From NCBI GenBank assembly GCA_907165135.1, contig OU015567.1, positions 62,001-126,000 on the forward strand: a stretch of 64,000 nt of DNA, written 5' to 3'. Shown piece after piece: positions 1-57,394 of the stretch (its first letter is position 1; each line of letters opens with the position of its first letter). This stretch comes from Oikopleura dioica (lineage: Eukaryota; Animalia; Chordata). The position numbers and the translations under genes were made by a program. The notes below the pieces were generated by a model. It was given only the letters and a program-made list of their open reading frames with translations, searched no databases and was not told the origin of the DNA.

Positions 1-1238
1 AAATAAAATAAGGGCAAAAAACGAACTTTCAAAATTTTGACCTCGTTTTTGGGCGATTCATGATAACAATGACCATCGAAAAATTTTTTTGAATTTTTTC
101 TGTTGGGTTTGTGAGGCTCAGAATCAACCAAAATGACGCTCGGAAGACGGCAGAAACGCTGCAAATAAAATAAGGGCAAAAAACAAACTTTCAAAATTTT
201 GACCTCATTTTTGGGCGATTCATGATAACGATGACCATCGAAAAAAATTTTTTGAATTTTTTCTGTTGGGTTTGAGAGGCTCAGAATCAACCAAAATGAC
301 GCTCGGAAGACGGCAGAAACGCTGCAAATAAAATAAGGGCAAAAAACGAAAATTCAAAATTTTGACCTCGTTTTTGGGCGATTCATGATAACGATGACCA
401 TCGAAAAAAAATTTTTTTTTTGTTTTTTTCTTCTGTTGGGTTTGAGAGGCTCAGAATCTACCAAAATGACGCTCGGAAGACGGCAAAAACGCTGCAAATA
501 AAATAAGGGCAAAAAACGAATTTTCAAAATTTTGTTCTCGTTTTTGGGCGATTCATGATAACGATGACCATCGAAAAAAAAATTTTTTTTTTGAATTTTT
601 TTTCTGTTGAGTTTGAGAGGCTCAGAATCAACCAAAATGACGCTCGGAAGACGGCAGAAACGCTGCAAATAAAATTAGAGCAAAAAACGAATTTTCAAAA
701 TTTTGACCTCGTTTTTGGGCGATTCATGATAACGATGACCATCGAAAAAAAATTTTTTTTTTTTGAATTTTTTTTCTGTTTGGTTTGAGAGGCTCAAAAT
801 CAACCAAAATGACGCTCGGAAGACGGCAGAAACGTTGCAAATAAAATTAGAGCAAAAAACGAATTTTCAAAATTTTGACCTTATTTTTGGGCGATTCATG
901 ATAACGATGACCATCGAAAAAAAATTTTTTTTTTGAATTTTTTTTCTGTTGGGTTTGAGAGGCTCAGAATCGACCAAAATGACGCTCGGAAGACGACAAA
1001 AACGCTGCAAATAAAATAAGAGCAAAAAACGAATTTTCAAAATTTTGACCTCATTTTTGGGCAATTCATGATAACGATGACCATCGAAAAAAAATTTTTT
1101 TTTTGAATTTTTTTTCTGTTGGGTTTGAGAGGCTCAGAATCAACCAAAATGACGCTCGGAATACGGCAGAAACGCTGCAAATAAAATTAGACCAAATAAC
1201 GAAATTTCAAAATTTTGACCTCGTTTTTGGGCGATTTA
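1..1238 (+). repeat. ~165-bp tandem satellite, block 1
   Basis: Monomer ATTCATGATAACGATGACCATCG(A)n(T)nGAA(T)nCTGTTGGGTTTGAGAGGCTCAGAATCAACCAAAATGACGCTCGGAAGACGGCAGAAACGCTGCAAATAAAATAAGGGC(A)nCGAACTTTCAAAATTTTGACCTCGTTTTTGGGCG. CATGATA recurs at 59, 221, 384, 554, 725. Confidence 0.98.
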
Positions 1239-1545
1239 TGATACGGAAGCGGCTGTCCTGCAATTTATGCGCGTTCTCTAACTCTAGAATGCCAAGCTAA
1301 AAATGACGAGAATCAAATTTTTTAATTTGCGTGGTTTTATTTGTGATTTGAATGAGAAAAAGAAGCACGGCGCGCGGTTAAATACGGCGAGATTGAATCA
1401 ATGTTTTTGAACGAGCGGTTGTTTTTGAGCTTTTGAAAAGCTTTTGTTTTTGAAATCAAGGAAGAAAGCCCAAGGCCATCAAAGCAGTTTTTCTTTCGGG
1501 AAATCCTTACGGATCGTATTCTTGCCGATTTAGAGCTGAGCTTGT

Positions 1546-2752
1546 TGATATCCTTAGGGAACAACGCCTCAAGCCAAATAAAAAATTTTTATTTCACGGC
1601 CAAATATTTACGCCAATTCGGTTCTACGTTAGTTTAAATTTGTCTTGTCAGCTTGGTATCACCAAATTGATCAGACATATTTGCAAAAATCATTTCACGA
1701 TATTCTACTTAAAATGAAAAGATGGTCAGTTTTAACGAGCCAGATTGACCCAAAATTGTCTTATCATCATGTCATCTCCTTACGATCTATACGTTCTATC
1801 ATTGGAATGCTCATATGCTCTCATCATAATACTTTTCTAGTGCAATCTGATGTCAATTCATCCAAAAATATGCTATTTGCAAAACTGCATGTTTAATCTA
1901 TTTATCGATATTTCTTATCATTGCTTTGCGATTTTTAAAGTTCGATTATTGACAGTGCATACGATTCAACTTCTACAACAAGAAAGTCGTCAACATCTTC
2001 TTCAACAACAACTACTCCAACGAGCCGATAAACCGTCGTATCATCTCGGTGCCGTGGGGTCGGACAAACTCTATGTCAGGGCGTCCGCTTGTCGCAAATT
2101 AGCTCATCCGTAAGAGAAGATACGGTGCGAACCGCGACAGTAACTTCCCCCGGGTATGTTCCTTGGAATTTGCTTCTTCTGTGATTTCAATTTTGATAAA
2201 TTCATTTTATAAAATCCTGACCAAATTTTATTCAATTTATTTGTTAAAATTTTGTATATATTCTTTTTACTTTTCTCATCCTTTTTTTATTTCAACCATA
2301 ATTAACAGTCACTTCTACGGTCACATAGTGAGAAGTTTAAGTGGCTGTTATTATTTTCTGCTTTTTATTTTGAAAAAATTAATTTGCGTTTTATCTCGTC
2401 ACGCGCGGCGCCGGCTCCCGAAACCTTTGAAAATAACTTGCTTGGCAAGTTCGATCAGCTCGTCTTCCGAAAAGAAATCGATCCGAAAGGATTTCCCGCA
2501 AGAAAAACCGCTAAAGAAAGCCACGGGCTCTCTTCCTTGTTTTCAAAAGAAAAATTGCTTTTCAAAAACAACCGCTTGTTCAAAAACACTGATCAAATCT
2601 CGCTGCTATTTAACCCCGCGTCGCGCCTTTTTCAGTCATTCAAATCACAAATAAAACCACGCAAATTTAAAATTTGATTCTCGTTATTTTGGCTTGGCAT
2701 TCTAGAGTTAGAGATCGAGCAAAATTCTTGCAGGACAGCCGCTTCCGTATCA
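1546..2752 (+). repeat. 5' LTR of A1 (1207 bp)
   Basis: Direct repeat of 8370-9572 with TG...CA termini. Confidence 0.97.
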
Positions 2753-3862
2753 TGGTGACCCCAACTCCTGAAGAGGTACTGTACAAGAGTCATGCGCTTT
2801 TTTCGGTTTCCCCAAATCAGATGATTAGATTAGGAATGAGAAATTTCGAATTCAATTTGATTAATTCTACAATTAAAGACAAATTACAGCGTGCAAAATG
2901 GATTTTTGAAAAATCTCTGGCGGAAAATAAACCCGAAAACAAAGAGGACCTCGAGGCTCAATTTTCGCGCCTTTCAAGCTCTTTTGTTTATAATTCATGC
3001 GAGCCGGAATTTCTTAGGGAATACGGGGAAGATCTTTATGGATTTGAATCAGCTGAGGAAAAATTGTCTTTTTTGACGTCTGTTTTTGGCGACGAATCGC
3101 CCGAGGAAAAGATCCTTCGAAACAAAGAAAAAATGGAAAATCTCACCCGAAAGAGCGAGAACAATGAAAAATTCGAGATATTTTTGTCACGTGTTAAAAC
3201 TGTCGCGGAGAAAATTACGCAGAAACCGGACGCGAGAGAATACATTATCGACGCGCAATTTAGAAAATCGCTCACGCCTGAACTGCAGAATTTTCTTCGC
3301 GATCAGTGTATGCTTGAAAAAACACCCGAGGAAATATCCAAATTTCTTGACAAAAGAAAACGAAATGAGACTATCCCCAAAATTGCCCAAATCGAAATTG
3401 ACGCGAAACTTGGCTCGTTTTTCCAGTCGACTTCCGACTTAATTTCAAAATCGACAATGTCCTTTGAGGATCAAATTTCTCAATTGAAAATTGAACAGAA
3501 AAAATCAGAAGAGGCGGCGGAAAAACGGGCGAGTGCGCTTCATGATCAAATTGAAAAACTAACGGCAACAATTGCAAAATTAGAAGTTGATCGCCGCAAC
3601 GATCAGAGTTTGACGCGTCAAAATAACCAGCAACGGAATTTTCAAAGTCGAAATTTGGGCGCGCCAAACCCGGATCGGCCAAGGCCTCGACGATTTTGTG
3701 GATTTTGTAACACAGACACTCATTTTAGATCGCATTGCCCCTTTATTACCTGTCATTTTTGTCAGAAAAAAAGGCCACATGAAAACAGCTTGCCCCGATA
3801 ATCCCGATAGAATTTACAGAGCTGCTCGGGTCGAGGGAGAAGAAACTTCAAAAAACGAGTAA
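2752..3862 (+). CDS. gag: Gag of A1 (two CCHC knuckles; one apparent +1 A indel at 3766-3772)
   Basis: ORF from ATG 2752 (MVTPTPEEV...) with CGFCNTDTHFRSHC. Removing one A from the 7-A run restores CHFCQKKGHMKTAC and a stop at 3860-3862. Confidence 0.9.
2753..2762 (+). promoter_or_regulatory. Primer-binding site, tRNA-Trp type (TGGTGACCCC)
   Basis: Directly abuts the 5' LTR. Matches the first 10 nt of the classical tRNA-Trp PBS TGGTGACCCCGACGTGA. Confidence 0.8.
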
Positions 3863-3897
3863 ATGGAACTGAAAGCCCTGGTCAGGCACCAGTTCCA
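3850..3897 (+). promoter_or_regulatory. -1 ribosomal frameshift signal (A AAA AAC plus downstream stem)
   Basis: Heptamer 3850-3856 is in X XXY YYZ phase with gag and pol is in the -1 frame. Stem TGGAACTG (3864-3871)/CAGTTCCA (3890-3897). Confidence 0.8.
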
Positions 3898-6800
3898 AGG
3901 ACTTGTTCAATTTTTCGCATTGGATTACAATATTTTGTAGAAATGACAGTTTTTTCAAAAAAAATAAAAATGCTCGTCGATTCTGGCTCCCAACTTAACC
4001 TTTTGCCCAAATCATTTATTCCCGATAATGTTAAAATTCAAGCCCCTGATATTTTTGCTAAAAATTACGGTGGAGGAAGTATTGAAATTCTTGGTTTTGT
4101 CGAATGTGATTTTCATGTTAAAACGGAAAAATGGGGTAAATCGCGATTTTATATTGTAAATGACAATTGTCAGGCAATTCTCGGTTCGGAAGCACTTAAA
4201 TCTAATGAAATTATGATCAATCTTCATCGAAATCGTCTAGTTAAATCTGGTCCTATAGAGCGAATGGCGAATTTATGTAATAATGCATCAAAAAGCCCAA
4301 CAGTTAATAACATTGAGCAAGACAGTTTTTATGCCGTTTCTGAGCAAACTTACACATTTCGAGGCAAAAGTGAGCAAATTATCGATTTAAAAATTCCTCA
4401 TTTGAACAGATCAATGAATCTTTTTTTAGAAGAAAGCCAGCTTAAAAATTCGAAGCTAGAGTTAATAGAATCATTCCAGAGAGTTGATCCCGAGAATCCA
4501 TTCTTTCGTATTCTTGTTATAAATCCCCTGAATTCTACAGTTAAAATTCCTGCTGGCACGGCCTTTGCAAAACTAGCGGAAATAGCTGAGATCGCCCAAA
4601 TCAAGCCCTCAAAAAAAGATCTTAATTTTCTTCTTTCGCGGTTAAAAATAGGCAATATATCGAAAAAGAATAAGCCGGTACTTTTTGGTCTTCTTGCTAT
4701 ATACACCCATTTATTTCAAGACGAGGACGACAATTTGCCTGTTTCGAACCTTGAAAAATTTTCGATTGAACTAGAGACTGATCGCCCGATTTGTAGCAAT
4801 ATGTACAGAACGCCATATGCCTTGCGGGGAATAATGACCGGTACTACTACCTCCTACCTTGGGCAAGACATGATAATGCGAATTAATTCACCCTATAATA
4901 GCCCCGCGTTACTCGTAAGGAAAAAGAATGGTACATTCAGATTATGTATTGATTACAGGAAATTAAATTCGTTTACGCTCCAGCAGCATCATCCGTTGCA
5001 ACAAATTGAAGACGTTTTAGGGTATTTAGAAAATAGCATTATTTTTTCTTGTGTTGATTTGCGAAAAGGATTTCATCAGTGCCTCGTAGATGAGAAATCG
5101 CGAGAAAAACTAGCTTTTTCGACTGAAGACGGACAATTTACTTGGAAAAGGCTTCCAATGGGTCTCAAAAATGCCCCTATTCATTTCGCAAAATGCATGG
5201 ATGTTATTTTACGAGACACGCCGAAAACTCAAATTTGCGCTTATCTTGACGATTTAGTGGTCCATTCAAGAACGGAAGAAGAACATTTAGCCAATTTACG
5301 TAAATTATTTCAAATTTTAGACCAAAATAATTTACGGATTAACATCGACAAAGCGAGTTTTTTTGAGCGAAAAGCATGCATTTTGGGTTTTGAAATTTTT
5401 GAAGGGAGAATACGGCCATCACAGGACAAGATCGAAGCGGTTAAAAATCTGTCTATTCCGAGAAACCGTGAGGAGGCACAATCACTTTTCGGACTTCTTT
5501 CGCAGCACAGAAAATTTATTAAAAATTTTGCACCCCTTGGAGTAGAAATTTCAAAAACGTACAGAGGGTCATTTTGTTGGACAAAAGAGGCGACGATTTC
5601 ACTCGAAAAGCTCAAAAGTATCATCTGCCATAACGCTCTTGAGCTCAAAATCCCCCCACTAAATGACGGTGTTTTCGTACTCGAGACAGACGCATCTAAT
5701 CATAGTTTTGGTGGAGTTCTTTATCTTTGCGCGGAGCGAAATAAAAATCACCATCATTCTCATAATTGCCTACAACCGATAGCTTACCACTCGCTTAATT
5801 TTACGCCGGCACAACAGAAATACGGGACATTGGAAAAAGAACTTTATAGTGGGAAGACATGTATGGAACGATGGAGGGCTTATCTTGCTTATGTCGATTT
5901 TCTTTGGATTACTGATAACTCTTGTGTTAAATACGCTCAATCCTTCAAGACAAATAATTTAAAAATTCAAAGATGGTTTACGGAGCTTCAGGGCTTTTCA
6001 TTTCGAATTGAACAGAGGAAAACTCATCAAATGAAAATAAGTGATTGCCTTAGTCGTAATACATTAAATTGTTCGATCAATCAAATAAAATTTACCCCTG
6101 AATCATTCGTAGAGTTTCAAAAATCTGACCCAGTATTATCACAAGTTAGACGTTTCGTTAGTATTGATAGATGGCCAAATAACCCACCAAGCGAGCTTTA
6201 CCCATTCTTTTTACGTAGACCTGACCTTGAAATCCTTGGGTCTGGTGAGCTAGCTATAAATTCTCCAGCCTATCAAAAAAAGATTTTGCGTCCCCGAGGC
6301 ATTGACAGAGACAATTTGCAGCGAATATCATGATCACTCTCATTTCGGAGTCGATATTACAACCGAAAAAATTTCTAGAAAGTATTTTTGGCCGGGATTA
6401 AAAAATACAGTCGCGAGCTTTATAAAATCATGTCACAAATGTCAAATTTCAAAACCAAATCTACAGCCTAACAAACCTCCTTTAGGCAAATCTGAAACAC
6501 CTAGCGGCCCTTTTGAAATTTTGTACTTTGATTTAATTGGCCCACTTCAAGAAACTGATTTTGGTCATAAATATATAATGGTGGTTATTGACGGTTTTAG
6601 CAAAAAAGTTTACGCGGAGCCCCTATCGTGCAAAAAATCGGATTATTTACTGCAAAAATTCCGGAGCGTATTATTTAGAAATCCAAAATTTCCAAAATAT
6701 ATGGTTTTAGATAACGCGAAGGAACACGTTCTGATTGAAAAATTTTTGAAAGAAAATAAAATTGGTGTACATTATATTCCCCCGCGTCATCCCCAGTCTA

Positions 6801-8319
6801 ACGGGCAAGTTGAAAACGTCAATAGAACCATAAAAGCCAGGCTCAGGGCTCGTTCAAATTGGGTGAATTGGGATATTTTTCTGTTTGAAATTGTTCACGA
6901 AATAAACAGTAGTTTACACACAGTACTCGGAACAACCCCATTTTGTGTAGAAACTGGTATAAAAAGCAGTCATCATTTTCAAGACCCTTATTGGCGAACA
7001 TACGGAGATAAAATCGACGTAGACTTTGAGAAAATTCGTGCGAAAATTGAACAAGAAAAGCAAAAAAGAATGACCAAATTTGAAAATCCCCGTTTCAAAG
7101 AATACAATTTAGGCGATAAAGTTCTTATTAAAAATTTCCGCGAAAAATTTCCTCCGTTTTTAGGTCCTTATGAAGTGACGTTTAAATCCCCGAGTGGTCT
7201 GTGGTACGCTGTTAAAAATGATAAGGACGAATTTAGGCGACATGCGGAACATATGAAAAGTTATTCTCAGCGAAATTCAATTTTAGAGACGAATAATGAT
7301 GTTGAAAAATACTCCAAGATTGTGACAAAGCCACAAGAGAACGATCTCGAGTTTTTTGAATTTTTTTCCGAAAACTGTCTTTTTTCGAAGGATTCCCTCG
7401 GCCGGTTTGCTGAAAATTCCCCCACAGAAAAAGAATCGGAAAAAGCGCATGAACCTTTCTCCTCCGAAAGGTCAGATCAGTCTTTACAATCGGAACCTTA
7501 TCGGGAGCGGTCTAGTTCTTCTTCAGAACCAGAAAATTTTTCATCCTCATCGACTCTTTTGATAGAAATGCCAGTACCGAATATAAATGGTAATCAAGAA
7601 CGTGATTTGAATCAAGTAGGAAATGGATCAGACATTGTGCTTGATTCCGAGAAATCAAGTTCTGATTCTGAGCTCTCTGTTAATTTGACATCGTACGATA
7701 AATTGCCCGAAATTGATCCGCTAGTTGCTTTAAAACGTAGAAGGGAAAGATCTGATGATTCCGTTGTCGAGCGTAAAATTGCTAAATTCACAGTTGAAAA
7801 TAATTTGGAAAACATGTCAATTTTAATTAAAATGGAAAATCATGATCTTGACTTTTTCGAACATCTTAATGATAAATGGAAAAATACAGACGACATAGAG
7901 GAGACCTATGTTGAAAATGGTATATTTATCAAACTGAACGAATTAACAAGAGACTCTCTTTTATTCATTCTTTTTAAAATGAATCAGGAATTTGATCTTG
8001 AGGAATCAAGGGCAAAACTTCAGATAAAAGTGAAGGAAACTATTCGTAGAGAATATCCGAATTGGCGTAAATCGAGAAACGGACAACTCCTTTTTTTTTT
8101 GCGGTCTTTAGAGTGCAAAAAGAGCGAACGTTGTACGAACTAACTGTCCCCGAGCTAAAAACTGTATGCGCATTTTATGATTTACCCTGTAAATTTCGAA
8201 ACTGCTCAAAAACAATTTTACAGGCATCTATCGAAACAGAACTGCTTAAAAAATTTCCAAATCATCCAATGCGTAAAAATGTTCTTGTTTTTCTTCCGGA
8301 CTTTGAAACTGAAATATAA
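3850..8319 (+). CDS. pol: Pol of A1: protease, RT, RNase H, integrase and long C-terminal extension (ORF pieces 3943-6333, 6302-8143, 8113-8319)
   Basis: Protease LVDSGS; RT LCIDYRKLN and YLDD; RNase H VLETDAS; IN HHCC zinc finger, D,D,E core and GPY motif. The two breaks lie in A7 and T-run homopolymers and are open in copy A2. Confidence 0.95.
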
Positions 8320-8369
8320 AAAAAGATGGGCGATAAAGATGCTCGTTTGGGACCCATGGAAGGTCACAG

Positions 8370-9572
8370 TGATATCCTTAGGGAACAACGCCTCAAGCCA
8401 AATAAAAAATTTTTATTTCACGGCCAAATATTTACGCCAATTCGGTTCTACGTTAGTTTAAATTTGTCTTGTCAGCTTGGTATCACCAAATTGATCAGAC
8501 ATATTTGCAAAAATCATTTCACGATATTCTACTTAAAATGAAAAGATGGTCAGTTTTAACGAGCCAGATTGACCCAAAATTGTCTTATCATCATGTCATC
8601 TCCTTACGATCTATACGTTCTATCATTGGAATGCTCATATGCTCTCATCATAATACTTTTCTAGTGCAATCTGATGTCAATTCATCCAAAAATATGCTAT
8701 TTGCAAAACTGCATGTTTAATCTATTTATCGATATTTCTTATCATTGCTTTGCGATTTTTAAAGTTCGATTATTGACAGTGCATACGATTCAACTTCTAC
8801 AACAAGAAAGTCGTCAACATCTTCTTCAACAACAACTACTCCAACGAGCCGATAAACCGTCGTATCATCTCGGTGCCGTGGGGTCGGACAAACTCTATGT
8901 CAGGGCGTCCGCTTGTCGCAAATTAGCTCATCCGTAAGAGAAGATACGGTGCGAACCGCGACAGTAACTTCCCCGGGTATGTTCCTTGGAATTTGCTTCT
9001 TCTGTGATTTCAATTTTGATAAATTCATTTTATAAAATCCTGACCAAATTTTATTCAATTTATTTGTTAAAATTTTGTATATATTCTTTTACTTTTCTCA
9101 TCCTTTTTTATTTCAACCATAATTAACAGTCACTTCTACGGTCACATAGTGAGAAGTTTAAGTGGCTGTTATTATTTTCTGCTTTTATTTTGAAAAAATT
9201 AATTTGCGTTTTATCTCGTCACGCGCGGCGCCGGCTCCCGAAACCTTTGAAAATAACTTGCTTGGCAAGTTCGATCAGCTCGTCTTCCGAAAAGAAATCG
9301 ATCCGAAAGGATTTCCCGCAAGAAAAACCGCTAAAGAAAGCCACGGGCTCTCTTCCTTGTTTTCAAAAGAAAAATTGCTTTTCAAAAACAACCGCTTGTT
9401 CAAAAACACTGATCAAATCTCGCTGCTATTTAACCCCGCGTCGCGCCTTTTTCAGTCATTCAAATCACAAATAAAACCACGCAAATTTAAAATTTGATTC
9501 TCGTTATTTTGGCTTGGCATTCTAGAGTTAGAGATCGAGCAAAATTCTTGCAGGACAGCCGCTTCCGTATCA
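8370..9572 (+). repeat. 3' LTR of A1 (1203 bp)
   Basis: Direct repeat of 1546-2752. Confidence 0.97.
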
Positions 9573-10578
9573 CTTGTCGAGCTTGCCGAGCAAGTTATGA
9601 TCGTTTATCTTTTCGAGCCGGCGCCGCGTGTGAAGAGTTCATAAAACGCAAATTATAATTTTTGATAAAAATAAACAAAGAATAAATTTACAGTCATTTA
9701 AACTTCTCACTATGTGACCGTAGAAATGACTGTAAAATAAAAACGAATAAAAGAAATAAAGAATATGTACAAAATAAGAAATAAATATTTAAACTTAAAT
9801 TTGGTCAGGATTCTAGTTAAAATATTTTTTTCGAATTTAAAGAATAGAAGAAATCCAAGGAACGTACCCGGGGAGAGTTACTGTCGCGGTTCACATCGTA
9901 TCTTCTCTTACGACTCGCTACTTTGCGACAAGCGGGCCTTCTGACATAGAAAAGGACCCGTTCCCACGGCATCGCGAGTGATACGGCGATATATCGGTTC
10001 GTTGAAGTAGTAGAAGTTGTTAAGAGCGTTGTAGGCGTCCTCGTTGTTGAAATTGAATCGTTAGCTGCACGGTCAATAATTGAACTGTAAAATCGCAAGA
10101 CGTGATAATAAAAAGATCGAATATTAAAACGAAGCACGGTATTGCGAGGTACTATTTGTTTGATGAAATGACGTCGAATTGCACTAGAAAAGTCAGAAAC
10201 AAATTAAAATTTTTCGAAGTATGCGTACATACACATTAATCCTAGACAGAACCCTTAATTAATTTCCGACCCGTTGATTATGATGAGAGCATGTGAGCAT
10301 TCCAATGAAAGATAGAAAAGACCAAAAGAATAAGATAATGAGATGATAACGAATTGATGTTTTGGGTCAGTCTGGCTCGTTAAAACTGACCGTCTTTTTT
10401 ATCGTGTTTAGAAAACTACCGTGAAATGATTTTTTACGAAAAAACTGAGAAATCAATTTGGTGATACCAAGCTGATAAAACAGATTTTATAACCATGTAG
10501 ACCCGAACTTGCGTAAATCTTTGGCCGTGAAAAAGAAGAGTTTGATTTTGTTTGAGGCGTTGTTCCCTAAGGATATCA

Positions 10579-43475: not shown

Positions 43476-43811
43476 CTATGACCATCGAAAAAAATTTTTT
43501 TTTTTTTTGAATTTTTTTTCTGTTGGGTTTAAGAGGCTCAGAATCAACCAAAATGACGCTCGGAAGACGACAAAAACGCTGCAAATAAAATAAGAGCAAA
43601 AAACGAATTTTCAAAATTTTGACCTCATTTTTGGGCGATTCATGATAACGATGACCATCGAAAAAAAAATTTTTTTTGAATTTTTTTTCTGTTGGGTTTG
43701 AGAGGCTCAGAATCAACCAAAATGACGCTCGGAAGACAGCAGAAACGCTGCAAATAAAATTAGGGCAAAAAACGAACTTTCAAAATTTTGACCTCACTTT
43801 TTGGCGATTCA
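43476..43811 (+). repeat. ~165-bp satellite, block 7 (2 monomers)
   Basis: Same monomer. Confidence 0.97.
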
Positions 43812-45101: not shown

Positions 45102-46202
45102 ATGGTGACCCCAACTCCTGAAGAGGTACTGTACAAGAGTCATGCGCTTTTTTCTGTTTCCCGAATCAAATGATAAGATTAGGAATGAGAAATTTTGAAT
45201 TTAATTTGATTAATTCCACAATTAAAGACAAATTACAGCGAGCAAAATGGATTTTTGAAAAATCTCTCGCGGAAAATAAACCCGAAAACAAAGAGGACCT
45301 CGAGGCTCAATTTTCGCGCCTTTCAAGTTCTTTTGTTTACAATTCATGCGAGCCCGAATTTCTTAGGGAATACGGGGAAGATCTTTATGGATTTGAATCA
45401 GCTGAGGAAAAATTGTCTTTTTGACGTCTGTTTTTGGCGACGAATCGCCCGAGGAAAAATCCTTCGAAACAAAGAAAAATGGAAAATCTCGCCCGAAAGA
45501 GCGAGAACAATGAAAAATTCGAGATTTTTTGTCACGTGTTAAAACAGTCGCGGAGAAAATAACGCAAAAACCGGACGCGAGAGAATACATTATCGACGCG
45601 CAATTTAGAAAATCGCTCACGCCTGAACTGCAGAATTTTCTTCGCGATCAGTGTATGCTTGAAAAAACCCCGAGGAAATATCCAAATTTCTTGACAAAAG
45701 AAAACGTAATGAAACTATCCCCAAAATTGCCCAAATCGAAATTGACGCGAAACTTGGCTCGTTTTTCAGTCGACTTCTGACTTAATTTCGAAATCGACAA
45801 TGTCCTTCGAGGACCAAATTTCTCAATTGAAAATTGAACAGAAAAAATCAGAAGAGGCGGCGGAAAAACGGGCGTGTGCGCTTCATGATCAAATTGAAAA
45901 ACTAACGGCAACAATTGCAAAATTAGAAGTTGATCGCCGCAACGATCAGAGTTTGACGCGCCAAAATAACCAGCAACGGAATTTTCAAAGTCGAAATTTG
46001 GGCGCGCCGAATTCGGATCGGCCAAGGCCTCGACGATTTTGTGGATTTTGTAACACAGACACTCATTTTAGATCGCATTGCCCCTTTATTACCTGCCACT
46101 TTTGTCAGAAAAAGGCCACATGAAAACGGCTTGTCCCGATAATCCCGATAGAATTTACCGAGCTGCTCGGATCGAGGGAGAGGAAACTTCAAAAACGAGT
46201 AA
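45102..46202 (+). CDS. gag: Gag of A2 (many homopolymer indels)
   Basis: Colinear and near-identical in protein to A1 gag. Confidence 0.85.
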
Positions 46203-49200
46203 ATGGAGCTGAAAGCCCTGGTCAGGCACCAGTTCCAAGAACTTGTTCAATTTTTCGCATTGGATTACAATATTTTGTAGAAATGACAATTTTTCAAAGA
46301 AAATAAAAATGCTCGTCGATTCAGGTTCCCAACTTAATCTTTTGCCTAAATCATTTATTCCCGATAACGTTAAAATTCAAGCCCCTGATATTTTTGCTAA
46401 AAACTATGGTGGAGGAAGTATTGAAATTCTTGGTTTTGTTGAATGTGATTTTCATGTTAAAACGGAAAAGTGGGGTAAATCGCGATTTTATATTGTAAAT
46501 GACAATTGTGAGGCAATTCTCGGTTCGGAAGCACTGAAATCTAATGAAATAATGATCAATCTTCATCGTAATCGTCTATTTAAATCTGGTCCTATCGAGC
46601 GTATGGCAAATTTATGTAATAATTCATCAAAAAGCCCAACAGTAAATAACATTGAGCAAGACAATTTTTATGCCGTTTCTGAACAAAATTTCACATTTAG
46701 AGGCAAAAGTGAGCAAATAATCGACTTGAAAATTCCTCATTTGAACAGATCAATGAACCTTTTTTAGAAAAAGCCAGCTCAAAAATTCGAAGCTCGAATT
46801 AATAGAATCATTTCAGAGAGTTGATCCCGAATCTCCATTTTTCGTATTCTTGTTATAAATCCCCTGAATTCTACAGTGAAAATTCCTGCTGGCACGGCTT
46901 TTGCGAAACTGGCAGAAATAGCTGAGATCGCGTGCATAAAGCCCTCAAAAAAAGATCTTAATTTTCTTCTTTCGCGGTTAAAAATAGGCGATGTATCGAA
47001 AAACAATCAGCCAAAATTTTTTGATCTTCTTGGTGTGTATACCCATTTATTTCAAGACGAGGACGATGATTTGCCTGTCTCGAACCTTGAAAAATTTTCG
47101 ATTGAACTTGAGACTGATCGCCCGATTTGTAGCAATATGTACAGAACGCCATATGCTTTGCGGGGAGTAATGACTGGGACTCTTACGTCCTACCTTGGTC
47201 AAGACATAATAATGCGAATAAATTCACCCTATAATAGCCCCGCGTTACTCGTAAGAAAACGAAACGGTACATTCAGACTGTGTATAGATTACAGAAAATT
47301 AAATTCATTTACGCTTCAGCAGCATCATCCGCTGCAACAAATTGAGGATGTTTTAGGGTTTTTAGAAAATAGCCTTATTTTTTCTTGCGTTGATTTGCGC
47401 AAAGGATTTCATCAGTGTCTCGTGGATGAGAAATCGCGAGAAAAACTAGCTTTTTCGACTGAAGACGGACAATTTACTTGGAAAAGGCTTCCCATGGGTC
47501 TTAAAAATGCCCCTATTCATTTCGCAAAATGCATGGATGTTATTTTACGAGACACGCCAAAAACTCAAATTTGCGCATATCTTGACGATCTTGTGGTCCA
47601 TTCAAGAACAGAGGAGGAACACCTAGCCAATTTATCTAAATTTTTTCAAATTTTAGATCAAAATAATTTACGGATAAATATTGACAAAGCGAGTTTTTTT
47701 GAGCGAAAAGCATGCATTTTGGGATTTGAAATTTTTAACGGGAGAATACGGCCATCACAGGACAAGATCGAAGCGGTTAAAAATCTTTCTATTCCAAGAA
47801 ACCGAGAGGAGGCACAATCACTTTTCGGACTTCTTTCGCAGCACAGAAAGTTTATTAAAAATTTTGCACCCCTGGGAGTGGAAATTTCAAAAACGTACAG
47901 AGGTTCATTTTGTTGGACAAAAGAGGCGACGATTTCACTCGAAAAGCTCAAAAGTATCATCTGCCATAATACTCTGGAGCTCAAAATCCCCCCACTAAAT
48001 AACGGTGTTTTTGTACTTGAGACTGACGCATCCAACCATAGTCTTGGTGGAGTTCTTTATCTTTGCGCGGAGCGAAATAAAAATCACCATCATTCGCATA
48101 ATTGCTTGCAACCGATAGCTTACCACTCGCTAAATTTTACGCCGGCACAACAAAAATACGGGACATTGGAAAAAGAGCTATATAGTGGGAAAACATGTAT
48201 GGAACGATGGAGAGCTTATCTTGCTTATGTCGATTTTCTTTGGATTACTGATAATTCTTGCGTAAAATACGCTCAATCTTTCAAGACAAGTAATTTGAAA
48301 ATTCAAAGATGGTTTACTGAGCTTCAGGGATTTTCATTTCGAATTGAACAAAGAAAAACTCATCAAATGAAAATAAGTGATTGCCTTAGTCGTAATACAT
48401 TAAATTGTTCAATCAATCAAATAAAGTTTACCCCTGAATCATTTGTTGAGTTTCAAAAATCTGACCGAGTATTATCACAAGTAAGACGTTTCGTTAAAAT
48501 TGATAGATGGCCAAATAACCCAGCTAGTGAGCTTTACCCATATTTTTTTACGTAGACCTGACCTTGAAATTCTTGAGTCCGGGGAACTAGCAATAAACTC
48601 TCCAGCATATCAAAAAAGATTTTGCGTCCCCGAGGCTTTGACAGAGACAATTTGCAGCGAATATCATGATCATTCTCATTTTGGAATCGATATAACAGCC
48701 GAGAAAATTTCTAGAAAGTATTTTTGGCCGGGATTAAAAAACACAGTCGCGAGCTTTATTAAATCATGTCACAAATGTCAAATTTCAAAACCAAATTTAC
48801 AGCCTAACAAACCTCCCTTAGGTAAATCTGAAACACCAAGCGGCCCTTTTGAAATTTTGTACTTCGATTTAATCGGCCCACTTCAAGAAACTGATTTTGG
48901 TCATAAATATGTAATGGTGGTTATTGACGGTTTCAGCAAAAAAGTTTATGCGGAGCCCTTATCTTGCAAAAAATCGGATTATTTACTGCAAAAATTTCGA
49001 AGCGTATTATTTAGAAATCCAAAATTTCCAAAATATATGGTTTTAGATAACGCGAAGGAACACGTTTTGATTGAAAAATTTTTGAAAGAAAACAAAATTG
49101 GTGTGCATTATATTCCCCCCGCGCCATCCCCAATCTAATGGGCAAGTTGAAAACGTCAATAGAACCATAAAAGCCAGGCTTAGGGCTCGTTCAAATTGGG

Positions 49201-50654
49201 TGAATTGGGATATTTTTCTGTTTGAAATTGTTCACGAAATAAACAGTAGTCTACATACAGTACTCGGAACAACCCCATTTTGTGTAGAAACTGGTATAAA
49301 AAGCAGTCATCATTTTCAAGACCCTAATTGGCGAACATACGGAGATAAAATCGACGTTGATTTTGAGAAAATTCGTGCAAAAATTGAACAAGAAAAACAA
49401 AAAAGAATGAACAAATTTGATAATCCCCGGTTCAAAGAATATAATTTAGGCGATAAAGTTCTTATCAAAAATTTCCGCGAAAAATTCCCTCCATTTATTG
49501 GTCCTTATGAAGTTACGTTTAAATCCCCGAGTGGCCTGTGGTACACTGTTAAAAATGATAAGGACGAATTTCGGCGTCATGCAGAGCATATAAAAAGTTA
49601 TTCTCAGCGGAATTTAACTGATGAGACGAATAATGATGCTGAAAAATACCCCAAGATTGTGACAAAAGTACAAGAAAATGATCTCGAGCTTTTCGAATTT
49701 TTCTCCGAAGATTGTCTTTTTTCGAGGGATTTCCTTGGTCGGTTTGCGAAAAATTTCTCTACAGAAAAAGAATCGGAAATAGCGCATGAATCTTTATCCT
49801 CCGAAATGTCAGATCAGTCTTTACAATCGGAACCTTATCGGGAGCGGTCTAGTTCTTCTTCAGAACCAGATAATTTTTCATCCTCATCGACTCTTTTGAT
49901 AGAAATGCCATTACCAAAAATTTATCGAAATCAACAACCTGATTTGAATCAAGTAGGAAATGGATCAGACATTGTGCTTGATTCCGAGAAATCAAGTTCT
50001 GATTCTGAGCTCTCTGTTAATTTGACATCGTACGATAAATTTCCCGAAATTGATCCGTTAGTTGCTCTAAAACGTAGAAGGGAAAGATCTGATGATTCCG
50101 TTGTCGAGCGAAAAATTGCTAAATTTACAGTTGAAAATAATTTGGAAAACATGTCAATTTTAATTAAAATGGAAAATCATGATCTTGACTTTTTCGAACA
50201 TCTAAATGATAAATGGAAAAATACAGACGACATAGAGGAGACCTATGTTGAAAATGGCATATTTATCAAACTGAACGAATTAACAAGAGACTCTCTGTTA
50301 TTCATTCTTTTTAAAATGAATCAGGACTTTGATCTCGAGGAATCAAGGGCGAAACTTCAGATAAAAGTGAAGGAAACTATTCGTAGAGAGTATCCGAATT
50401 GGCGTAAATCGAGAAACGGACAACTTCTTTTTTTTGCGGTCTTTAGAGTGCAAAAAGAGCGAACGTTGTACGAACTAACTGTCCCCGAGCTAAAGACTGT
50501 TTGCGCTTTTTATGATTTACCCTGTAAATTTAAAAACTGTTCAAAGACAATCTTACAGGCATCTATCGAAACAGAATTGCTGAAAAAATTTCCAAATCAT
50601 CCGATGCGAAAAAATGTTCTTGTTTTTCTTCCAGACTTTGAAACTGAAATATGA
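46190..50654 (+). CDS. pol: Pol of A2 (pieces 46243-46767, 46876-48555, 48500-49138, 49098-50654)
   Basis: LVDSGS, YLDD, VLETDAS, HHCC/DDE, GPY. The IN-to-C-terminus piece is one 518-aa ORF. Confidence 0.93.
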
Positions 50655-51996
50655 AAAAGAAAGGCGAAAAAGATGCTCGTTTGCGACCCATGGAAGGTCA
50701 CAGTGATATCCTTAGGGAACAACGCCTCAAGCAACACAAAAAATTTATTTCACGGCCAAGTATTTACGTCAATTCGGTTCTACGTTGGTTTAAATTTGTC
50801 TTGTCAGCTTGGTATCACCAAATTGATCAGACATTTTTTCAAAAATCATTTCACGATATTCTTCTCAAAATGAAAAGATGGTCAGTTTTTACGAGCCAGA
50901 TTGACCCAAAATTGTCTTATCATCATGTCATCTCTTTACGATTTCTATTTTTATCATTGGAATGCTCATATGCTCTCATCATAATCAACGGGTCGGAAAC
51001 TAATTAAGGGTTTATTCAGTCTAGGATTAATGTGTATGTACGCATACTTTGGAAGAAATCTTAATTCGTTTCTGACTATTCTAGTGCGATCTGACGTCAA
51101 TTCATCAAAAATATGCAATTCGCAAAACCGCATGTTTAATCTATTTATTGATATTTCTTATCATTGCTTTGCGATTTTAAAGTTCGATTATTGACAGTAC
51201 ATACGATTCAAAGTCTACAACAGAACAGCCGTCAACACCTTCTTCAACAACAACAACTCCAACGAGCAGATAAACCGTCGTATCATCTCGGTGCCGTGGG
51301 GTCGGACAAACTCTCTGTCAGTGCGTCCGCTTGTCGCAAACTAGCTCATCCGTAAGAGAAGATACGGTGCGAACCGCGACAGTAACTTCCCCCGGGTATG
51401 TTCCTTGGAATTTGCTTCTTCTATGATTTCAATTTTGATAAATTTATTTTATAAAATCCTGACCAAATTTTATTCAATTTATTTGTTAAAATTTTGTATA
51501 TATTCTTTTACTTTTCTCATCCTTTATTTATTTCAATCATAATTAACAGTCACTTCTACGGTCACATAGTGAGAAGTTTAAGTGGCTGTTATTATTTTCT
51601 GCTTTTTATTATGAAAAAATAATTAATTTGCGTTTTATCTCGTCACGCGCGGCGCCGGCTCCCGAAACCTTTGAAAATAACTTGCTTGGCAAGTTCGACC
51701 AGCTCCTCTTCCGAAAAGAAATCGATCCGAAAGGATTTCCCGCAAGAAAAACCGCTAAAAGAAGCTACGGGCTCTCTTCCTTGTTTTCGAAAGAAAAATT
51801 GTTTTTCAAAAACAACCGCTTGTTCAAAAACACTGATCGAATCTCGCTGCTATTTAACCCCGCGTCGCGCCTTTTTCCGTCATTCAAATCACAAATAAAA
51901 CCACGCAAATTTTAAATTTGATTCTCGTTGTTTTGGCTTGGCATTCTAGAGTTAGAGATCGAGCAAAATTCTTGCAGGACAGCCGCTTCCGTATCA

Positions 51997-54900
51997 ATTC
52001 ATGATAACGATGACCATCGAAAAAAAAATTTTTTTTTTGATTTTTTTTCTGTTGGGTTTGAGAGGCTCAGAATCAACCAAAATGACGCTCGGAAGACGTC
52101 AGAAACGCTGCAAATAAAATAAGGGCAAAAAACGAAATTTCAAAATTTTGACCTCGTTTTTGGGCGATTCATGATAACGATGACCATCGAAAAAAATTTT
52201 TTTGAATTTTTTTTCTGTTGGGTTTGAGAGGCTCAGAATCAACCAAAATGACGCTCGGAAGACGGCAGAAACGCTGCAAATAAAATTAGAGCAAAAACGA
52301 ATTTTCAAAATTTTGACCTCGTTTTTGGGCGATTTATGATAACGATGACCATCGAAAAAATTTTTTTGAATTTTTTTCTGTTGGGTTTGAGAGGCTCAGA
52401 ATCAACCAAAATGACGCTTGGAAGACGACAGAAACGCTGCAAATAAAATTAGAGCAAAAACGAATTTTCAAAATTTTGACCTCATTTTTGGGCGATTCAT
52501 GATAACGATGACCATCGAAAAATTTTTTTGAATTTTTTCTGTTGGGTTTGAGAGGCTCAGAATCGACCAAAATGACGCTCGGTAGACGACAGAAACGCTG
52601 CAAATAAAATTAGAGCAAAAACGAATTTTCAAAATTTTGACCTCATTTTTGGGCAATTCATGATAATGATGACCATCGAAAAAATTTTTTTGATTTTTTT
52701 TTCTGTTGGGTTTGAGAGGCTCACAATCAACCAAAATGACGCTCGGAAGACGACAGAAACGCTGCAAATAAAATTAGGGCAAAAACGAACTTTCAAAATT
52801 TTGACCTCGTTTTTGGGCGATTCATGATAACGATGACCATCGAAAAATATTTTTTGGGTTTTTTTCTGTTGGGTTTGAGAGGCTCAGAATCAACCAAAAT
52901 GACGCTCGGAAGACGGCAGAAACGCTGCAAATAAAATTAGGGCAAAAACGAAATTTCAAAATTTTGACCTCGTTTTTGGGCGATTCATGATAACGATGAC
53001 CATCGAAAAAATTTTTTTTTGAATTTTTTCTGTTGGGTTTGAGAGGCTCAGAATCAACCAAAATGACGCTCGGAAGACGACAAAAACGCTGCAAATAAAA
53101 TTAGAGCAAAAACGAATTTTCAAAATTTTGACCTCATTTTTGGGCGATTCATGATAACGATGACCATCGAAAAAAATTTTTTTGATTTTTTTCTGTTGGG
53201 TTTGAGAGGCTCAGAATCAACCAAAATGACGCTCGGAAGACGTCAGAAACGCTGCAAATAAAATAAGGGCAAAAAACGAAATTTCAAAATTTTGACCTCG
53301 TTTTTGGGCGATTCATGATAACGATGACCATCGAAAAAATTTTTTTGAATTTTTTCTGTTGGGTTTGAGAGGCTCAGAATCAACCAAAATGACGCTCGGA
53401 AGACGGCAGAAACGCTGCAAATAAAATTAGAGCAAAAACGAATTTTCAAAATTTTGACCTCGTTTTTGGGCGATTCATGATAACGATGACCATCGAAAAA
53501 TTTTTTTGAATTTTTTTCTGTTGGGTTTGAGAGGCTCAGAATCGACCAAAATGACGCTCGGAAGACGACAGAAACGCTGCAAATAAAATTAGAGCAAAAA
53601 CGAATTTTCAAAATTTTGACCTCATTTTTGGGCAATTCATGATAATGATGACCATCGAAAAAAAATTTTTTTTTTGATTTTTTTTTCTGTTGGGTTTGAG
53701 AGGCTCAGAATCAACCAAAATGACGCTCGGAAGACGACAGAAACGCTGCAAATAAAATTAGGGCAAAAAACGAACTTTCAAAATTTTGACCTCGTTTTTG
53801 GGCGATTTATGATAACGATGACCATCGAAAAAAAAATTTTTTTTTTGATTTTTTTTCTGTTGGGTTTGAGAGGCTCAGAATCAACCAAAATGACGCTCGG
53901 AAGACGTCAGTAACGCTGCAAATAAAATAAGGGCAAAAACGAAATTTCAAAATTTTGACCTCGTTTTTGGGCGATTCATGATAACGATGACCATCGAAAA
54001 ATTTTTTTGATTTTTTCTGTTGGGTTTGAGAGGCTCAGAATCAACCAAAATGACGCTCGGAAGACGTCAGAAACGCTGCAAATAAAATAAGGGCAAAAAA
54101 CGAAATTTCAAAATTTTGACCTCGTTTTTGGGCGATTCATGATAACGATGACCATTAAAAAAAATTTTTTTTTTTTTGAATTTTTTTTCTGTTGGGTTTG
54201 AGAGGCTCAGAATCAACCAAAATGACGCTCGGAAGACGTCAGAAACGCTGCAAATAAAATAAGGGCAAAAACGAAATTTCAAAATTTTGACCTCGTTTTT
54301 GGGCGATTTATGATAACGATGACCATCGAAAAAAAAATTTTTTTTTTGAATTTTTTCTGTTGGGTCTGAGAGGCTCAGAATCAACCAAAATGACGCTTGG
54401 AAGACGACAGAAACGCTGCAAATAAAATTAGAGCAAAAAACGAATTTTCAAAATTTTGACCTCATTTTTGGCGATTCATGATAACGATGACCATCGAAAA
54501 AAAAATTATTTTTTTGATTTTTTTTCTGTTGGGTTTGAGAGGCTCAGAATCAACCAAAATGACGCTCGGAAGACGTCAGAAACGCTGCAAATAAAATTAG
54601 GGCAAAAAACGTTTTCAAAATTTTGACCTCGTTTTTTTGCGATTCATGATAACGATGACCATCGAAAAAAATTTTTTTGAATTTTTTCTGTTGGGTTTGA
54701 GAGGCTCAGAATAAACCAAAATGACGCTCGGAAGACGGCAGAAACGCTGCAAATTAAATTAGAGCAAAAACGAACTTTCAAAATTTTGACCTCGTTTTTG
54801 GGCGATTCATGATAACGATGACCATCGAAAAAAATTTTTTTTTGAATTTTTTCTGTTGGGTTTGAGAGGCTCAGAATCAACCAAAATGACACTCGGGAGA

Positions 54901-57343: not shown

Positions 57344-57394
57344 TTCAAAAATGTGGCTTTTCAAAATTTGGGCCATCAATTTCGTTTGTACAAT

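What the first reader, a model, noticed from the sequence alone, without database searches (positions are those of the whole stretch)
1234..52001. Several independent Ty3/gypsy lineages insert into one 21-bp window of a ~165-bp satellite
Seen: TSDs of the direct satellite insertions are ATTTA (A0), ATGAC (B), ACCAT (E), AGAAG (28990), ATGAC (C), CGATG (F) and ATTCA (A2). Six of seven map to ATTCATGATAACGATGACCAT, about one eighth of the monomer, next to the A/T-tract. Two exact sites are reused by different elements (A0/A2 and B/C). The elements differ in sequence, so these are independent events, not array duplications. Known: centromere-enriched LTR elements exist (e.g. plant CRM chromoviruses), but they are not generally base-pair specific within the monomer. 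Inference: a satellite-targeting, near site-specific integration system, possibly centromeric.
Basis: partly seen in the sequence, partly recalled or inferred. Interest (0 to 1): 0.92.

Follow-up and report, generated by a model that had tools for sequence, protein, structure and literature searches.

The report
Site-specific retrotransposon insertions in a satellite
Several related but clearly distinct Ty3/gypsy retrotransposons have landed again and again at the same few base pairs of a 164-bp tandem repeat, apparently by reading short DNA motifs, and their integrases carry an unusual SAP-like tail in place of the usual chromodomain.

Summary
A 164-bp satellite, all on the + strand, is interrupted seven times by LTR elements with 5-bp TSDs. 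Six TSDs fall in phases 1-21. The uniform-null probability is about 3e-4, and 0.005 for the two exact reuses. The events are independent: B and C are only 73-76% identical while their own LTR pairs are over 99.4% identical, and A0 and A2 lie in opposite orientations.

The "one shared 21-bp window" is better read as lineage-specific sequence sites. B, C and E use one oriented site, CGATG|RYCAT|CG, on either strand of a near-palindrome. F lies 2 bp away. The A lineage uses GCG|ATTYA|TGATAAC twice. It also uses G|ANAAG|CTCAG twice, once in a rare monomer variant and once inside another LTR. Within the window these motifs, apart from G|ANAAG|CTCAG, occur only in the satellite.

All coding copies are Ty3/gypsy (PR-RT-RH-IN) without a chromodomain. 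They share a rare, basic, C-terminal tandem SAP-like module.

The most likely mechanism is direct sequence-directed integration, possibly read by that module. Centromeric location, genome-wide specificity and the host organism could not be tested. I rate it a new variant of a known kind.

The parts
1..56655 (+). ~164-bp satellite array in 8 segments: 1-1243, 10579-12116, 19960-20293, 26641-28987, 31499-32769, 40525-42338, 43476-43816, 51997-56655. It is interrupted by the elements listed below.
   Evidence: TRF; consensus from 72 monomers; blastn map showing + strand only; junction phases
1239..10578 (-). A0: solo LTR of about 1.3 kb (1239-1545 plus 9578-10578), A-like at about 77% identity to the A2 LTR and in reverse orientation. 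TSD ATTTA at 1234-1238 and 10579-10583, phase 1-5. It is split by the nested element A1.
1546..9572 (+). A1: full-length A-lineage element nested in A0. LTRs at 1546-2752 and 8370-9572 are 99.7% identical. TSD CTTGT at 1541-1545 and 9573-9577. TGG... follows directly after the 5' LTR. The integrase tail is broken by a frameshift near 8095.
12117..19959 (-). B: full-length element. LTRs at 12117-13175 and 18902-19959 are 99.7% identical. TSD ATGAC at 12112-12116 and 19960-19964, phase 14-18. The pol reading frame is in several pieces.
20294..26640 (+). E: solo LTR of about 1043 bp (20294-21081 plus 26386-26640), 63-65% identical to the B and C LTRs. It starts TA and ends CA. TSD ACCAT at 20289-20293 and 26641-26645, phase 17-21. 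It is split by the nested element D.
21082..26380 (+). D: internally deleted element of a further lineage. LTRs at 21082-22222 and 25176-26380 are about 99% identical, and the 5' LTR lacks its last ~57 bp. TSD ATCAC at 21077-21081 and 26381-26385. The integrase ORF at 23171-25108 has an intact C-terminal module.
28990..31498 (+). A-type composite without an internal region. It consists of a complete LTR (28990-30282), an inverted 5' LTR piece (30283-30841) and a 3' LTR piece (30842-31498). TSD AGAAG at 28985-28989 and 31499-31503, phase 57-61, in a rare monomer variant.
32770..40524 (-). C: full-length element. LTRs at 32770-33799 and 39495-40524 are 99.4% identical. TSD ATGAC at 32765-32769 and 40525-40529, phase 14-18. 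The 930-aa RH-IN ORF is at 33861-36653.
42339..43475 (-). F: solo LTR of 1137 bp with TGATACC...GGTATCA termini, weakly related to the D LTR. TSD CGATG at 42334-42338 and CTATG at 43476-43480, phase 12-16.
43812..51996 (+). A2: full-length A-lineage element, 94% identical to A1. LTRs at 43812-45102 and 50704-51996 are 99.8% identical. TSD ATTCA at 43807-43811 and 51997-52001, phase 1-5.
33864..34439 (-). C-terminal tandem SAP-like module of the C integrase. Homologous modules lie at 50082-50651 (+) in A2, 24536-25105 (+) in D, about 13259-13684 (-) in B with a frameshift just upstream, and about 7745-8316 (+) in A1 with a frameshift inside.
56645..56660 (.). End of the satellite at phase 11 (ATTCATGATAA|GTTCGGG), inside the hot window. 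It abuts a 57-bp tandem array. The partner junction is not in the window and the nature of the flanking sequence is unknown.

Best explanation
At least three diverged lineages of one clade of Ty3/gypsy LTR retrotransposons integrate at short, lineage-specific DNA motifs carried by every monomer of a 164-bp satellite. The lineages are A, B/C/E and D/F.

What the sequence shows:
- Read in element orientation, B, C and E all sit at CGATG|RYCAT|CG. This is one oriented site, offered on both strands by the near-palindrome at phases 12-23.
- F sits 2 bp away, in the same orientation as B and C.
- The A lineage sits at GCG|ATTYA|TGATAAC twice, once in each orientation.
- The A lineage also sits at G|ANAAG|CTCAG twice.

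What is inferred: the intasome reads target sequence or shape directly. The satellite is hit mainly because it multiplies the motifs thousands of times, so no centromeric chromatin mark is required. The integrases lack a chromodomain and end in a conserved, basic, tandem helix-extended-helix (SAP-like) module behind an acidic linker. I propose, without having shown it, that this module is the DNA-reading or anchoring part, possibly helped by the adjacent A7T7AAT7 tract.
For: Non-random placement: at least 6 of 7 TSDs in 17 start positions has P = 2.9e-4, and two exact reuses has P = 0.005.

Mirror relation: B and C (minus-strand elements) have TSD 14-18, and E (plus-strand) has TSD 17-21. These are exact mirror images about the centre of CGATGACCATCG, so all three share flank, TSD and relative orientation. 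Under a null of 328 oriented states this is about 1e-5.

Shared second motif: the element at 28990 and the nested A1, which sits in an LTR and not in the satellite, share 10 of 11 nt in TSD register. The empirical P is about 0.002.

Rare variant: the 28990 element sits in one of only 3 of about 63 monomers that carry AGAAG instead of AGAGG. That variant matches the A1 site better.

Motif distribution: CGATGRYCATCG and ATTYATGATAA occur 54-79 times in the window and never outside the satellite.

Independence.

Proteins: the domain order is PR-RT-RH-IN with no chromodomain. The C-terminal module is shared by all five coding copies. It is confined to 72 cluster representatives out of 1.84 billion, nearly all at pol C-termini or in fragments. 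Five of 47 homologues pass as Pfam SAP with best E = 1.2e-7, 3 as SAP_new25 and 2 as Rho_N. Relative P0031 scores 26.3 bits against a cut-off of 23.9. The AlphaFold2 model has pLDDT 80.7 and shows two helix-loop-helix units. The only low-rmsd PDB matches are SAP or SAP-like domains. The module core has pI 8.6-9.3 behind a linker of pI about 4.
Against: - There are only nine events in one window, and all motif statements are post hoc.
- The two A-lineage motifs are not obviously related to each other.
- D's nested site resembles the B/C site only weakly (8 of 11, P about 0.05) and in the opposite relative orientation.
- The window copies of the module do not themselves reach the Pfam SAP threshold, and no structural match is significant.
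- All sites in the satellite lie within about 25 bp of the A/T tract, which a chromatin or linker model would also predict.
- No DNA-binding evidence exists for the module.
- Genome-wide distribution is unknown.
Confidence: 0.6

Rival explanations
1. Chromatin tethering. The integrase tail binds a feature of satellite chromatin, such as a centromeric histone, a strongly phased nucleosome whose linker is the A/T tract, or a host satellite-binding protein. The geometry of that complex would then set a narrow window near the nucleosome edge for all lineages.
For: All seven satellite insertions lie within about 25 bp of the 23-bp A/T tract, six on one side and one on the other. The monomer length of 164 bp fits one nucleosome plus a short linker. 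Several lineages cluster in the same 21 bp. Integrase C-termini are known to set centromere targeting in Tal1 (PMC11735389).
Against: A1 used the same 10-of-11-nt motif as the 28990 element, but inside an LTR and outside any satellite phase. The 28990 element chose a rare sequence variant. B, C and E are coupled in orientation to a palindrome centre rather than to the one-sided A/T tract. No chromodomain is present. No chromatin data are available.
Confidence: 0.22
2. Ordinary weak integrase target preference plus small numbers. In a target with only 164 distinct sites, a modest generic bias gives apparent hot spots. The enrichment in the satellite would then reflect tolerance (a safe haven) rather than targeting.
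For: There are only seven satellite events. Weakly palindromic preferences are common for integrases (general knowledge). Tal1 and EVD show local nucleotide biases (PMC11735389). A non-uniform null would raise the P values.
Against: Three of three B/C/E events fall at one of 328 oriented sites, which implies that this site takes a large share of the insertions (one-sided 95% bound about 0.37). Two A-lineage motif pairs also recur, including one outside the satellite. That is stronger than typical weak consensus preferences.
Confidence: 0.12
3. Pol III-directed integration as in yeast Ty3 or Dictyostelium DGLT-A. The monomer would carry a small Pol III gene, with its T-runs acting as terminators, and integration would be placed relative to it.
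For: T-runs flank the hot window, and the base-level precision recalls Ty3 (general knowledge).
Against: ARAGORN finds no tRNA. Rfam gives no match at gathering thresholds and only chance-level matches at E up to 10.
Confidence: 0.03
4. Not independent. One insertion was copied by array duplication or unequal exchange, giving repeated identical TSDs, as described for some centromeric arrays.
For: Identical TSDs from post-insertion copying are documented elsewhere (bioRxiv 10.64898/2026.09.17.752431).
Against: B and C differ by about 25% while each has LTRs over 99.4% identical. A0 and A2 are in opposite orientation and about 77% identical.
Confidence: 0.01

Closest known systems
Plant centromeric chromoviruses (CRM clade) and ATHILA in Arabidopsis CEN178
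   Same: They are Ty3/gypsy LTR elements that accumulate as young, nested copies inside satellite arrays. In CRM the targeting is attributed to the integrase C-terminus.
   Different: No chromodomain or CR motif is detectable here; the tail is a tandem SAP-like module. Site choice here is near base-specific and lineage-specific within the monomer. That is not reported in the papers I could read.
Tal1/ALE4 Ty1/copia of Arabidopsis lyrata (centrophilic integration via CENH3 chromatin; PMC11735389)
   Same: Integration goes into a centromeric tandem repeat, and specificity maps to the integrase C-terminal region.
   Different: Tal1 belongs to a different superfamily. Its targeting follows CENH3 chromatin and moves when CENH3 spreads, and only weak local nucleotide bias is described. 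Here the recurring motifs, one of them outside the satellite, argue for sequence readout.
Yeast Ty3 (position-specific integration at Pol III start sites)
   Same: It is a Ty3/gypsy element with 5-bp TSDs and integration precise to a few base pairs.
   Different: Ty3 is placed by TFIIIB at tRNA genes (general knowledge). No Pol III gene was found in this monomer.
Sequence-specific insect errantiviruses (gypsy, ZAM, Idefix, 297/17.6), recalled from memory and not tested here
   Same: They are Ty3/gypsy-superfamily elements whose independent insertions recur at short defined target sequences.
   Different: Those elements carry env and target short simple motifs dispersed in the genome. The elements here have no ORF between the integrase and the 3' LTR. 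Their motifs are 10-12 nt, orientation-coupled for B/C/E, and amplified in a satellite.
Repeat-specific non-LTR elements (R1/R2 in rDNA, TRAS/SART in telomeric repeats), recalled from memory
   Same: They are retroelements that live by hitting one exact site of a tandemly repeated target.
   Different: Those use sequence-specific endonucleases and target-primed reverse transcription. The elements here use a DDE integrase on LTR-flanked DNA.
SAP / HeH domains (SAF-A, PIAS, Ku70, MANF C-terminal domain; Pfam PF02037)
   Same: The fold is helix, extended loop, helix. Homologues of the module pass the Pfam SAP threshold, and the local structural matches are to SAP-like domains. SAP domains are known to bind A/T-rich DNA (general knowledge).
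   Different: Here there are two tandem units packed with beta-strands into one domain at an integrase C-terminus. The window copies fall below the Pfam threshold, and DNA binding is untested.

Membership tests
Ty3/gypsy (Metaviridae) LTR retrotransposon | Direct LTRs with TG...CA termini around an internal region, flanked by a short TSD | tested here: met
   LTR pairs are 99.0-99.8% identical. Termini read TGATA...TATCA. TSDs are 5 bp for A1, A2, B, C and D.
Ty3/gypsy (Metaviridae) LTR retrotransposon | Pol domain order protease, RT, RNase H, integrase | tested here: met
   Pfam RVP, RVT_1, RT_RNaseH, Integrase_H2C2 and rve occur in that order in A1, B and C.
Ty3/gypsy (Metaviridae) LTR retrotransposon | Primer binding site next to the 5' LTR | tested here: inconclusive
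   A1 has TGGTGACCCCAAC directly after its 5' LTR. The tRNA was not identified and the other copies were not examined.
Chromovirus / CRM centromeric retrotransposon | Chromodomain or CR motif at the integrase C-terminus | tested here: not met
   There is no PF00385 hit at E <= 0.001 on the whole ORFs, nor at E <= 10 on the C-terminal parts.
Chromovirus / CRM centromeric retrotransposon | Location in functional (CENH3) centromere chromatin | not testable with these tools
   There are no chromatin data, and the organism and chromosome position are unknown.
SAP / HeH DNA-binding domain (PF02037) | Match to the Pfam SAP model above its threshold | tested here: inconclusive
   The window copies give no hit. 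Among homologues found by profile search, 5 of 47 hit SAP (best E 1.2e-7), 3 hit SAP_new25 and 2 hit Rho_N. P0031 scores 26.3 bits against a cut-off of 23.9, aligned to repeat 1.
SAP / HeH DNA-binding domain (PF02037) | Helix, extended loop, helix fold | tested here: inconclusive
   The AlphaFold2 model (pLDDT 80.7, pTM 0.74) has two such units, H76-85/H96-110 and H141-150/H161-175. The best low-rmsd matches are MANF, CDNF, ERI1 and Hcc-1 SAP domains, but all have E > 0.1.
SAP / HeH DNA-binding domain (PF02037) | Binds DNA, typically A/T-rich | not testable with these tools
   The only support is indirect: a basic core (pI 8.6-9.3) and an A/T tract beside the hot sites.
Pol III-directed integration (Ty3, DGLT-A) | A tRNA or other Pol III gene at a fixed distance from the insertion | tested here: not met
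   ARAGORN finds 0 genes. Rfam gives 0 matches at gathering score and only chance-level hits on the monomers.
Sequence-specific LTR-element integration | Independent insertions recur at the same target sequence | tested here: met
   B, C and E sit at CGATG|RYCAT|CG. A0 and A2 sit at ATTYA|TGATAAC. The 28990 element and A1 sit at ANAAG|CTCAG.
Sequence-specific LTR-element integration | Specificity holds genome-wide and on naked DNA | not testable with these tools
   The source genome and the satellite are absent from the searchable collections.

The most novel reading that the evidence does not exclude
This could be a previously undescribed clade of Ty3/gypsy elements whose integrase has replaced the chromodomain with a tandem SAP-like DNA-reading head. 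It would carry out truly sequence-specific integration into a satellite monomer, orientation-specific in the B/C/E lineage, with different lineages having evolved different 10-12-nt target sites. That would make it a natural family of site-specific retroviral-type integrases.
Probability: 0.3. Interest if true: 0.85.

Novelty: new variant of a known kind. Interest (0 to 1): 0.68.

Why it matters
Targeted integration of LTR elements is usually regional and driven by tethering to chromatin or transcription factors. Base-pair specificity is rare and is best understood only for Ty3.

This is a set of related integrases that each hit a different short motif of one repeat and that share a compact, rare C-terminal module. 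It would give a natural comparative series for asking how a retroviral-type integrase can be made sequence-specific.

It would also offer a simple explanation of how retrotransposons come to colonise satellite, possibly centromeric, arrays: the repeat multiplies their target site. Both ideas can be tested directly with a genome-wide junction census and simple in vitro assays.

Tried and rejected
1. A Pol III or tRNA gene in the monomer. ARAGORN and Rfam were negative.
2. The satellite as a derivative of the elements. No similarity was found between the monomer and any element.
3. The hot window as the most conserved part of the monomer, like a protein-binding box. It ranks 52nd of 164 windows, and that figure is biased upward by my choice of anchor.
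4. More junctions from elsewhere. One 20-mer scan each of the metagenome and genome collections gave only single chance matches in bacterial-like contigs. The viral collection gave nothing.
5. Flanks of relatives. Contigs carrying relatives are element-sized or tandem copies and have no usable flanks. The one left flank obtained, in L003, is not a satellite.
6. Host identification. The best protein relatives are 56-64% identical and unnamed, from JGI, ENA and TARA metagenomes. Named hits are at most about 35% identical. The assembly GCA_035092485.1, which holds a distant relative, could not be linked to an organism. ORFs in 57.3-64 kb have no Pfam match.
7. The sequence beyond 56655 as another LTR element. 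No pol remnant and no similarity to the other LTRs were found.
8. Printed satellite sequence in papers. None was found.
9. Literature on SAP domains in gypsy integrases. None was found in the held library.
10. A common consensus uniting the two A-lineage motifs. Only a weak pattern (WNAAKCKC) emerged, and I am not claiming it.

Full report
**Observation**

The window holds one satellite family. Its consensus is 164 bp, monomers run 161-174 bp, and columns are about 96% conserved. All copies lie on the + strand, in eight segments between 1 and 56655. I set phase 1 at ATTCATGATAACGATGACCAT.

By aligning every junction to a tandem consensus and reading the ends, I recovered all seven direct interruptions and their 5-bp duplications:

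| Element | Coordinates | TSD | Phase |
|---|---|---|---|
| A0 | 1239-10578 | ATTTA | 1-5 |
| B | 12117-19959 | ATGAC | 14-18 |
| E | 20294-26640 | ACCAT | 17-21 |
| A-type composite | 28990-31498 | AGAAG | 57-61 |
| C | 32770-40524 | ATGAC | 14-18 |
| F | 42339-43475 | CGATG/CTATG | 12-16 |
| A2 | 43812-51996 | ATTCA | 1-5 |

In A0 and in the 28990 element, both TSD copies carry the same departure from the consensus (ATTTA for ATTCA, AGAAG for AGAGG). This shows they are true duplications of one monomer.

**Anatomy**

All LTR ends read TGATA...TATCA. Self-comparison gives the following picture.

- A0 is a solo LTR in reverse orientation, about 77% identical to the A2 LTR. It is split by the full-length A1 (1546-9572, TSD CTTGT, LTRs 99.7% identical).
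- A2 is 94% identical to A1, and its own LTRs are 99.8% identical.
- B and C are full-length minus-strand elements with LTRs 99.7% and 99.4% identical. They are only 73-76% identical to each other.
- E is a plus-oriented solo LTR, 63-65% identical to the B and C LTRs. It is split by D (21082-26380, TSD ATCAC).
- D is an internally deleted element of another lineage.
- F is a minus-oriented solo LTR weakly related to the D LTR.
- The 28990 element is LTR material only, with an inverted segment.

That makes nine integration events from at least three lineages: A, B/C/E and D/F.

**Independence**

Copying of one insertion by array exchange is documented in other centromeres (bioRxiv 10.64898/2026.09.17.752431). 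It is excluded here. The two pairs that share a TSD differ by about 25% (B versus C) or are inverted and about 23% diverged (A0 versus A2), while each element's own LTRs are nearly identical.

**Chance**

Under a uniform null over 164 phases, at least six of seven TSD starts in 17 positions has P = 2.9e-4. At least two exact coincidences has P = 0.005. These values are post hoc and assume uniformity, but the departure from chance is clear.

**Re-reading the sites**

The 21-bp window resolves into lineage-specific sequence sites.

1. Phases 12-23, CGATGACCATCG, form a near-palindrome. B and C are minus-strand elements with TSD 14-18. E is a plus-strand element with TSD 17-21. These are exact mirror images about the palindrome centre. 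Read in element orientation, all three have CGATG, then a TSD of RYCAT, then CG. That is one oriented site used three times, about 1e-5 under a null of 328 oriented states. F is 2 bp away, in the same orientation as B and C.
2. The A lineage used GCG|ATTYA|TGATAAC twice, once in each orientation.
3. Its two other events share 10 of 11 nt, G|A[G/C]AAG|CTCAG, in TSD register. These are the 28990 element at phase 57-61 and A1 inside the A0 LTR. The empirical P is about 0.002 against random site pairs from the window.
4. The 28990 element sits in one of only three of about 63 monomers that carry AGAAG rather than AGAGG. That variant is the better match to the A1 site.

The motifs CGATGRYCATCG and ATTYATGATAA occur 54-79 times in the window and never outside the satellite.

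One motif recurs outside the satellite, a rare variant was chosen, and orientation is coupled to a palindrome rather than to the one-sided A/T tract. I therefore favour DNA-sequence or DNA-shape recognition over a purely chromatin-defined window.

**Proteins**

Pfam gives RVP, RVT_1, RNase H, the H2C2 zinc domain and the rve core in Ty3/gypsy order. No chromodomain is found.

Beyond the integrase core and a GPY-type region lies an acidic, serine-rich linker (pI about 4). After it comes a conserved basic domain of about 130 residues (pI 8.6-9.3) made of two similar units. All five coding copies encode this domain. It is interrupted by frameshifts in A1 and B.

A profile search of 1.84 billion cluster representatives found only 72 proteins with the module. 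Nearly all are C-termini of 1250-1700-aa pol proteins or fragments of them. Of 47 homologous modules, five match Pfam SAP (best E 1.2e-7), three match SAP_new25 and two match Rho_N. Relative P0031 passes the SAP cut-off (26.3 versus 23.9 bits), and the hit aligns to unit 1.

AlphaFold2 on the alignment gives a confident model (pLDDT 80.7, pTM 0.74) with two helix-loop-helix units tied together by short strands. Foldseek finds no significant whole-domain match. The only low-rmsd local matches are SAP or SAP-like domains: MANF, CDNF, ERI1 and Hcc-1. The top non-significant viral matches are again Rho_N and SAP proteins. A PDB sequence search also placed the MANF C-terminal domain on unit 1 at E about 1.

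I call the module SAP-like. Full membership of the SAP family is not established for the window copies.

**Mechanism**

Shown: the same oriented sequence sites are reused independently and in a lineage-specific way, and the elements share an unusual integrase tail.

Inferred: the intasome reads the target sequence directly. SAP domains bind A/T-rich DNA (general knowledge), and a 23-bp A/T tract adjoins the main sites. The satellite is colonised because every monomer carries the sites.

The main rival is tethering to phased or centromeric chromatin. It would also put insertions near the A/T tract, and it has a precedent in Tal1, where the integrase C-terminus directs integration to CENH3 chromatin (PMC11735389). 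It explains the off-satellite motif match, the rare-variant choice and the palindrome-coupled orientation less well. Generic weak integrase bias with small numbers cannot be fully excluded. Pol III targeting and array duplication are rejected.

**What is known**

In the library I could search, I found no description of a SAP domain in a Ty3/gypsy integrase. I also found no report of base-specific, lineage-specific integration within a satellite monomer.

Regional centromere targeting by LTR elements is well known (CRM, ATHILA, Tal1). So are sequence-specific integration in some insect gypsy-like elements and exact-site targeting of tandem repeats by non-LTR elements; these last two points rest on my own knowledge. 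This finding therefore ranks as a new variant of a known kind.

**Limits**

- Only nine events are available, from one window.
- The host is unknown. The closest pol relatives are 56-64% identical and come from unnamed JGI, ENA and TARA metagenome contigs.
- The satellite was not found in any collection.
- Whether the array is centromeric cannot be told.
- Nothing in the window or in the fetched loci looked human.
- I built a consensus of the satellite monomer only.

**Verdict**

The best explanation is sequence-directed, lineage-specific integration by chromodomain-less Ty3/gypsy elements with a tandem SAP-like integrase tail (confidence about 0.6). Interest is 0.68.

Noticed in passing
window 28990-31498: This A-type insertion has no internal region. 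It consists of a complete LTR (28990-30282), then a 559-bp inverted copy of an LTR 5' part that is 98.9% identical to the A1 LTR, then the 3' 657 bp of an LTR. A perfect AGAAG TSD flanks the whole. It may be an autointegration or inversion product or a rearranged tandem LTR.
   Followed up: partly
window 56645-57343: The satellite stops at phase 11 (ATTCATGATAA|GTTCGGG), inside the hot window. It abuts 12 copies of a GC-rich 57-bp tandem repeat. The join could be read as ATTCA|TGATAAG..., like an LTR start, but no LTR or pol features follow.
   Followed up: partly
window 57344-64000: This non-satellite flank contains 133-bp (59105-59413) and 126-bp (60071-60375) tandem repeats and only short ORFs. 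It has no Pfam match and no similarity to the elements. Its nature is unknown.
   Followed up: partly
window, all satellite segments: Monomers fall into two length classes, 161-165 bp and 167-174 bp, that differ mainly in A/T-tract length. TRF also reports periods of about 326 and 491-500 bp. The rare AGAAG variant recurs every five monomers (27340, 28164, 28985). Together these suggest higher-order repeat structure.
   Followed up: partly
satellite phase 6-12 (e.g. window 52002-52008): The monomer carries TGATAAC, which mimics the LTR terminus (TGATAYC; relative L003 starts TGATAACC). It lies exactly between the A-lineage site and the B/C/E/F sites. This may be coincidence, or it may be a clue to target capture or to the origin of the satellite.
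   Followed up: no
window 32901-33004 and 39626-39729: There is a 40-bp tandem repeat (2.6 copies) inside both LTRs of element C.
   Followed up: no
window 21082-26380 (D); 7745-8316 (A1); about 13690 (B): D has lost the end of its 5' LTR and the gag-to-RT region but keeps an intact integrase tail. A1 and B have frameshifts in or just before the C-terminal module. B's pol is in several ORFs.
   Followed up: partly
L003 7868-10384; L012 4650-6506 and 13356-14647: More distant relatives that carry the same C-terminal module have an extra ORF of 618-838 aa after pol, possibly env-like. The window's elements lack it. The L003 LTR holds a 196-bp tandem repeat.
   Followed up: no
L008, L010, L012 (TARA Oceans scaffolds); L011 (GCA_035092485.1): Relatives with the module occur in marine plankton metagenomes and in one NCBI assembly whose organism I could not determine. 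L011 and L012 show two element copies in tandem sharing one LTR.
   Followed up: partly
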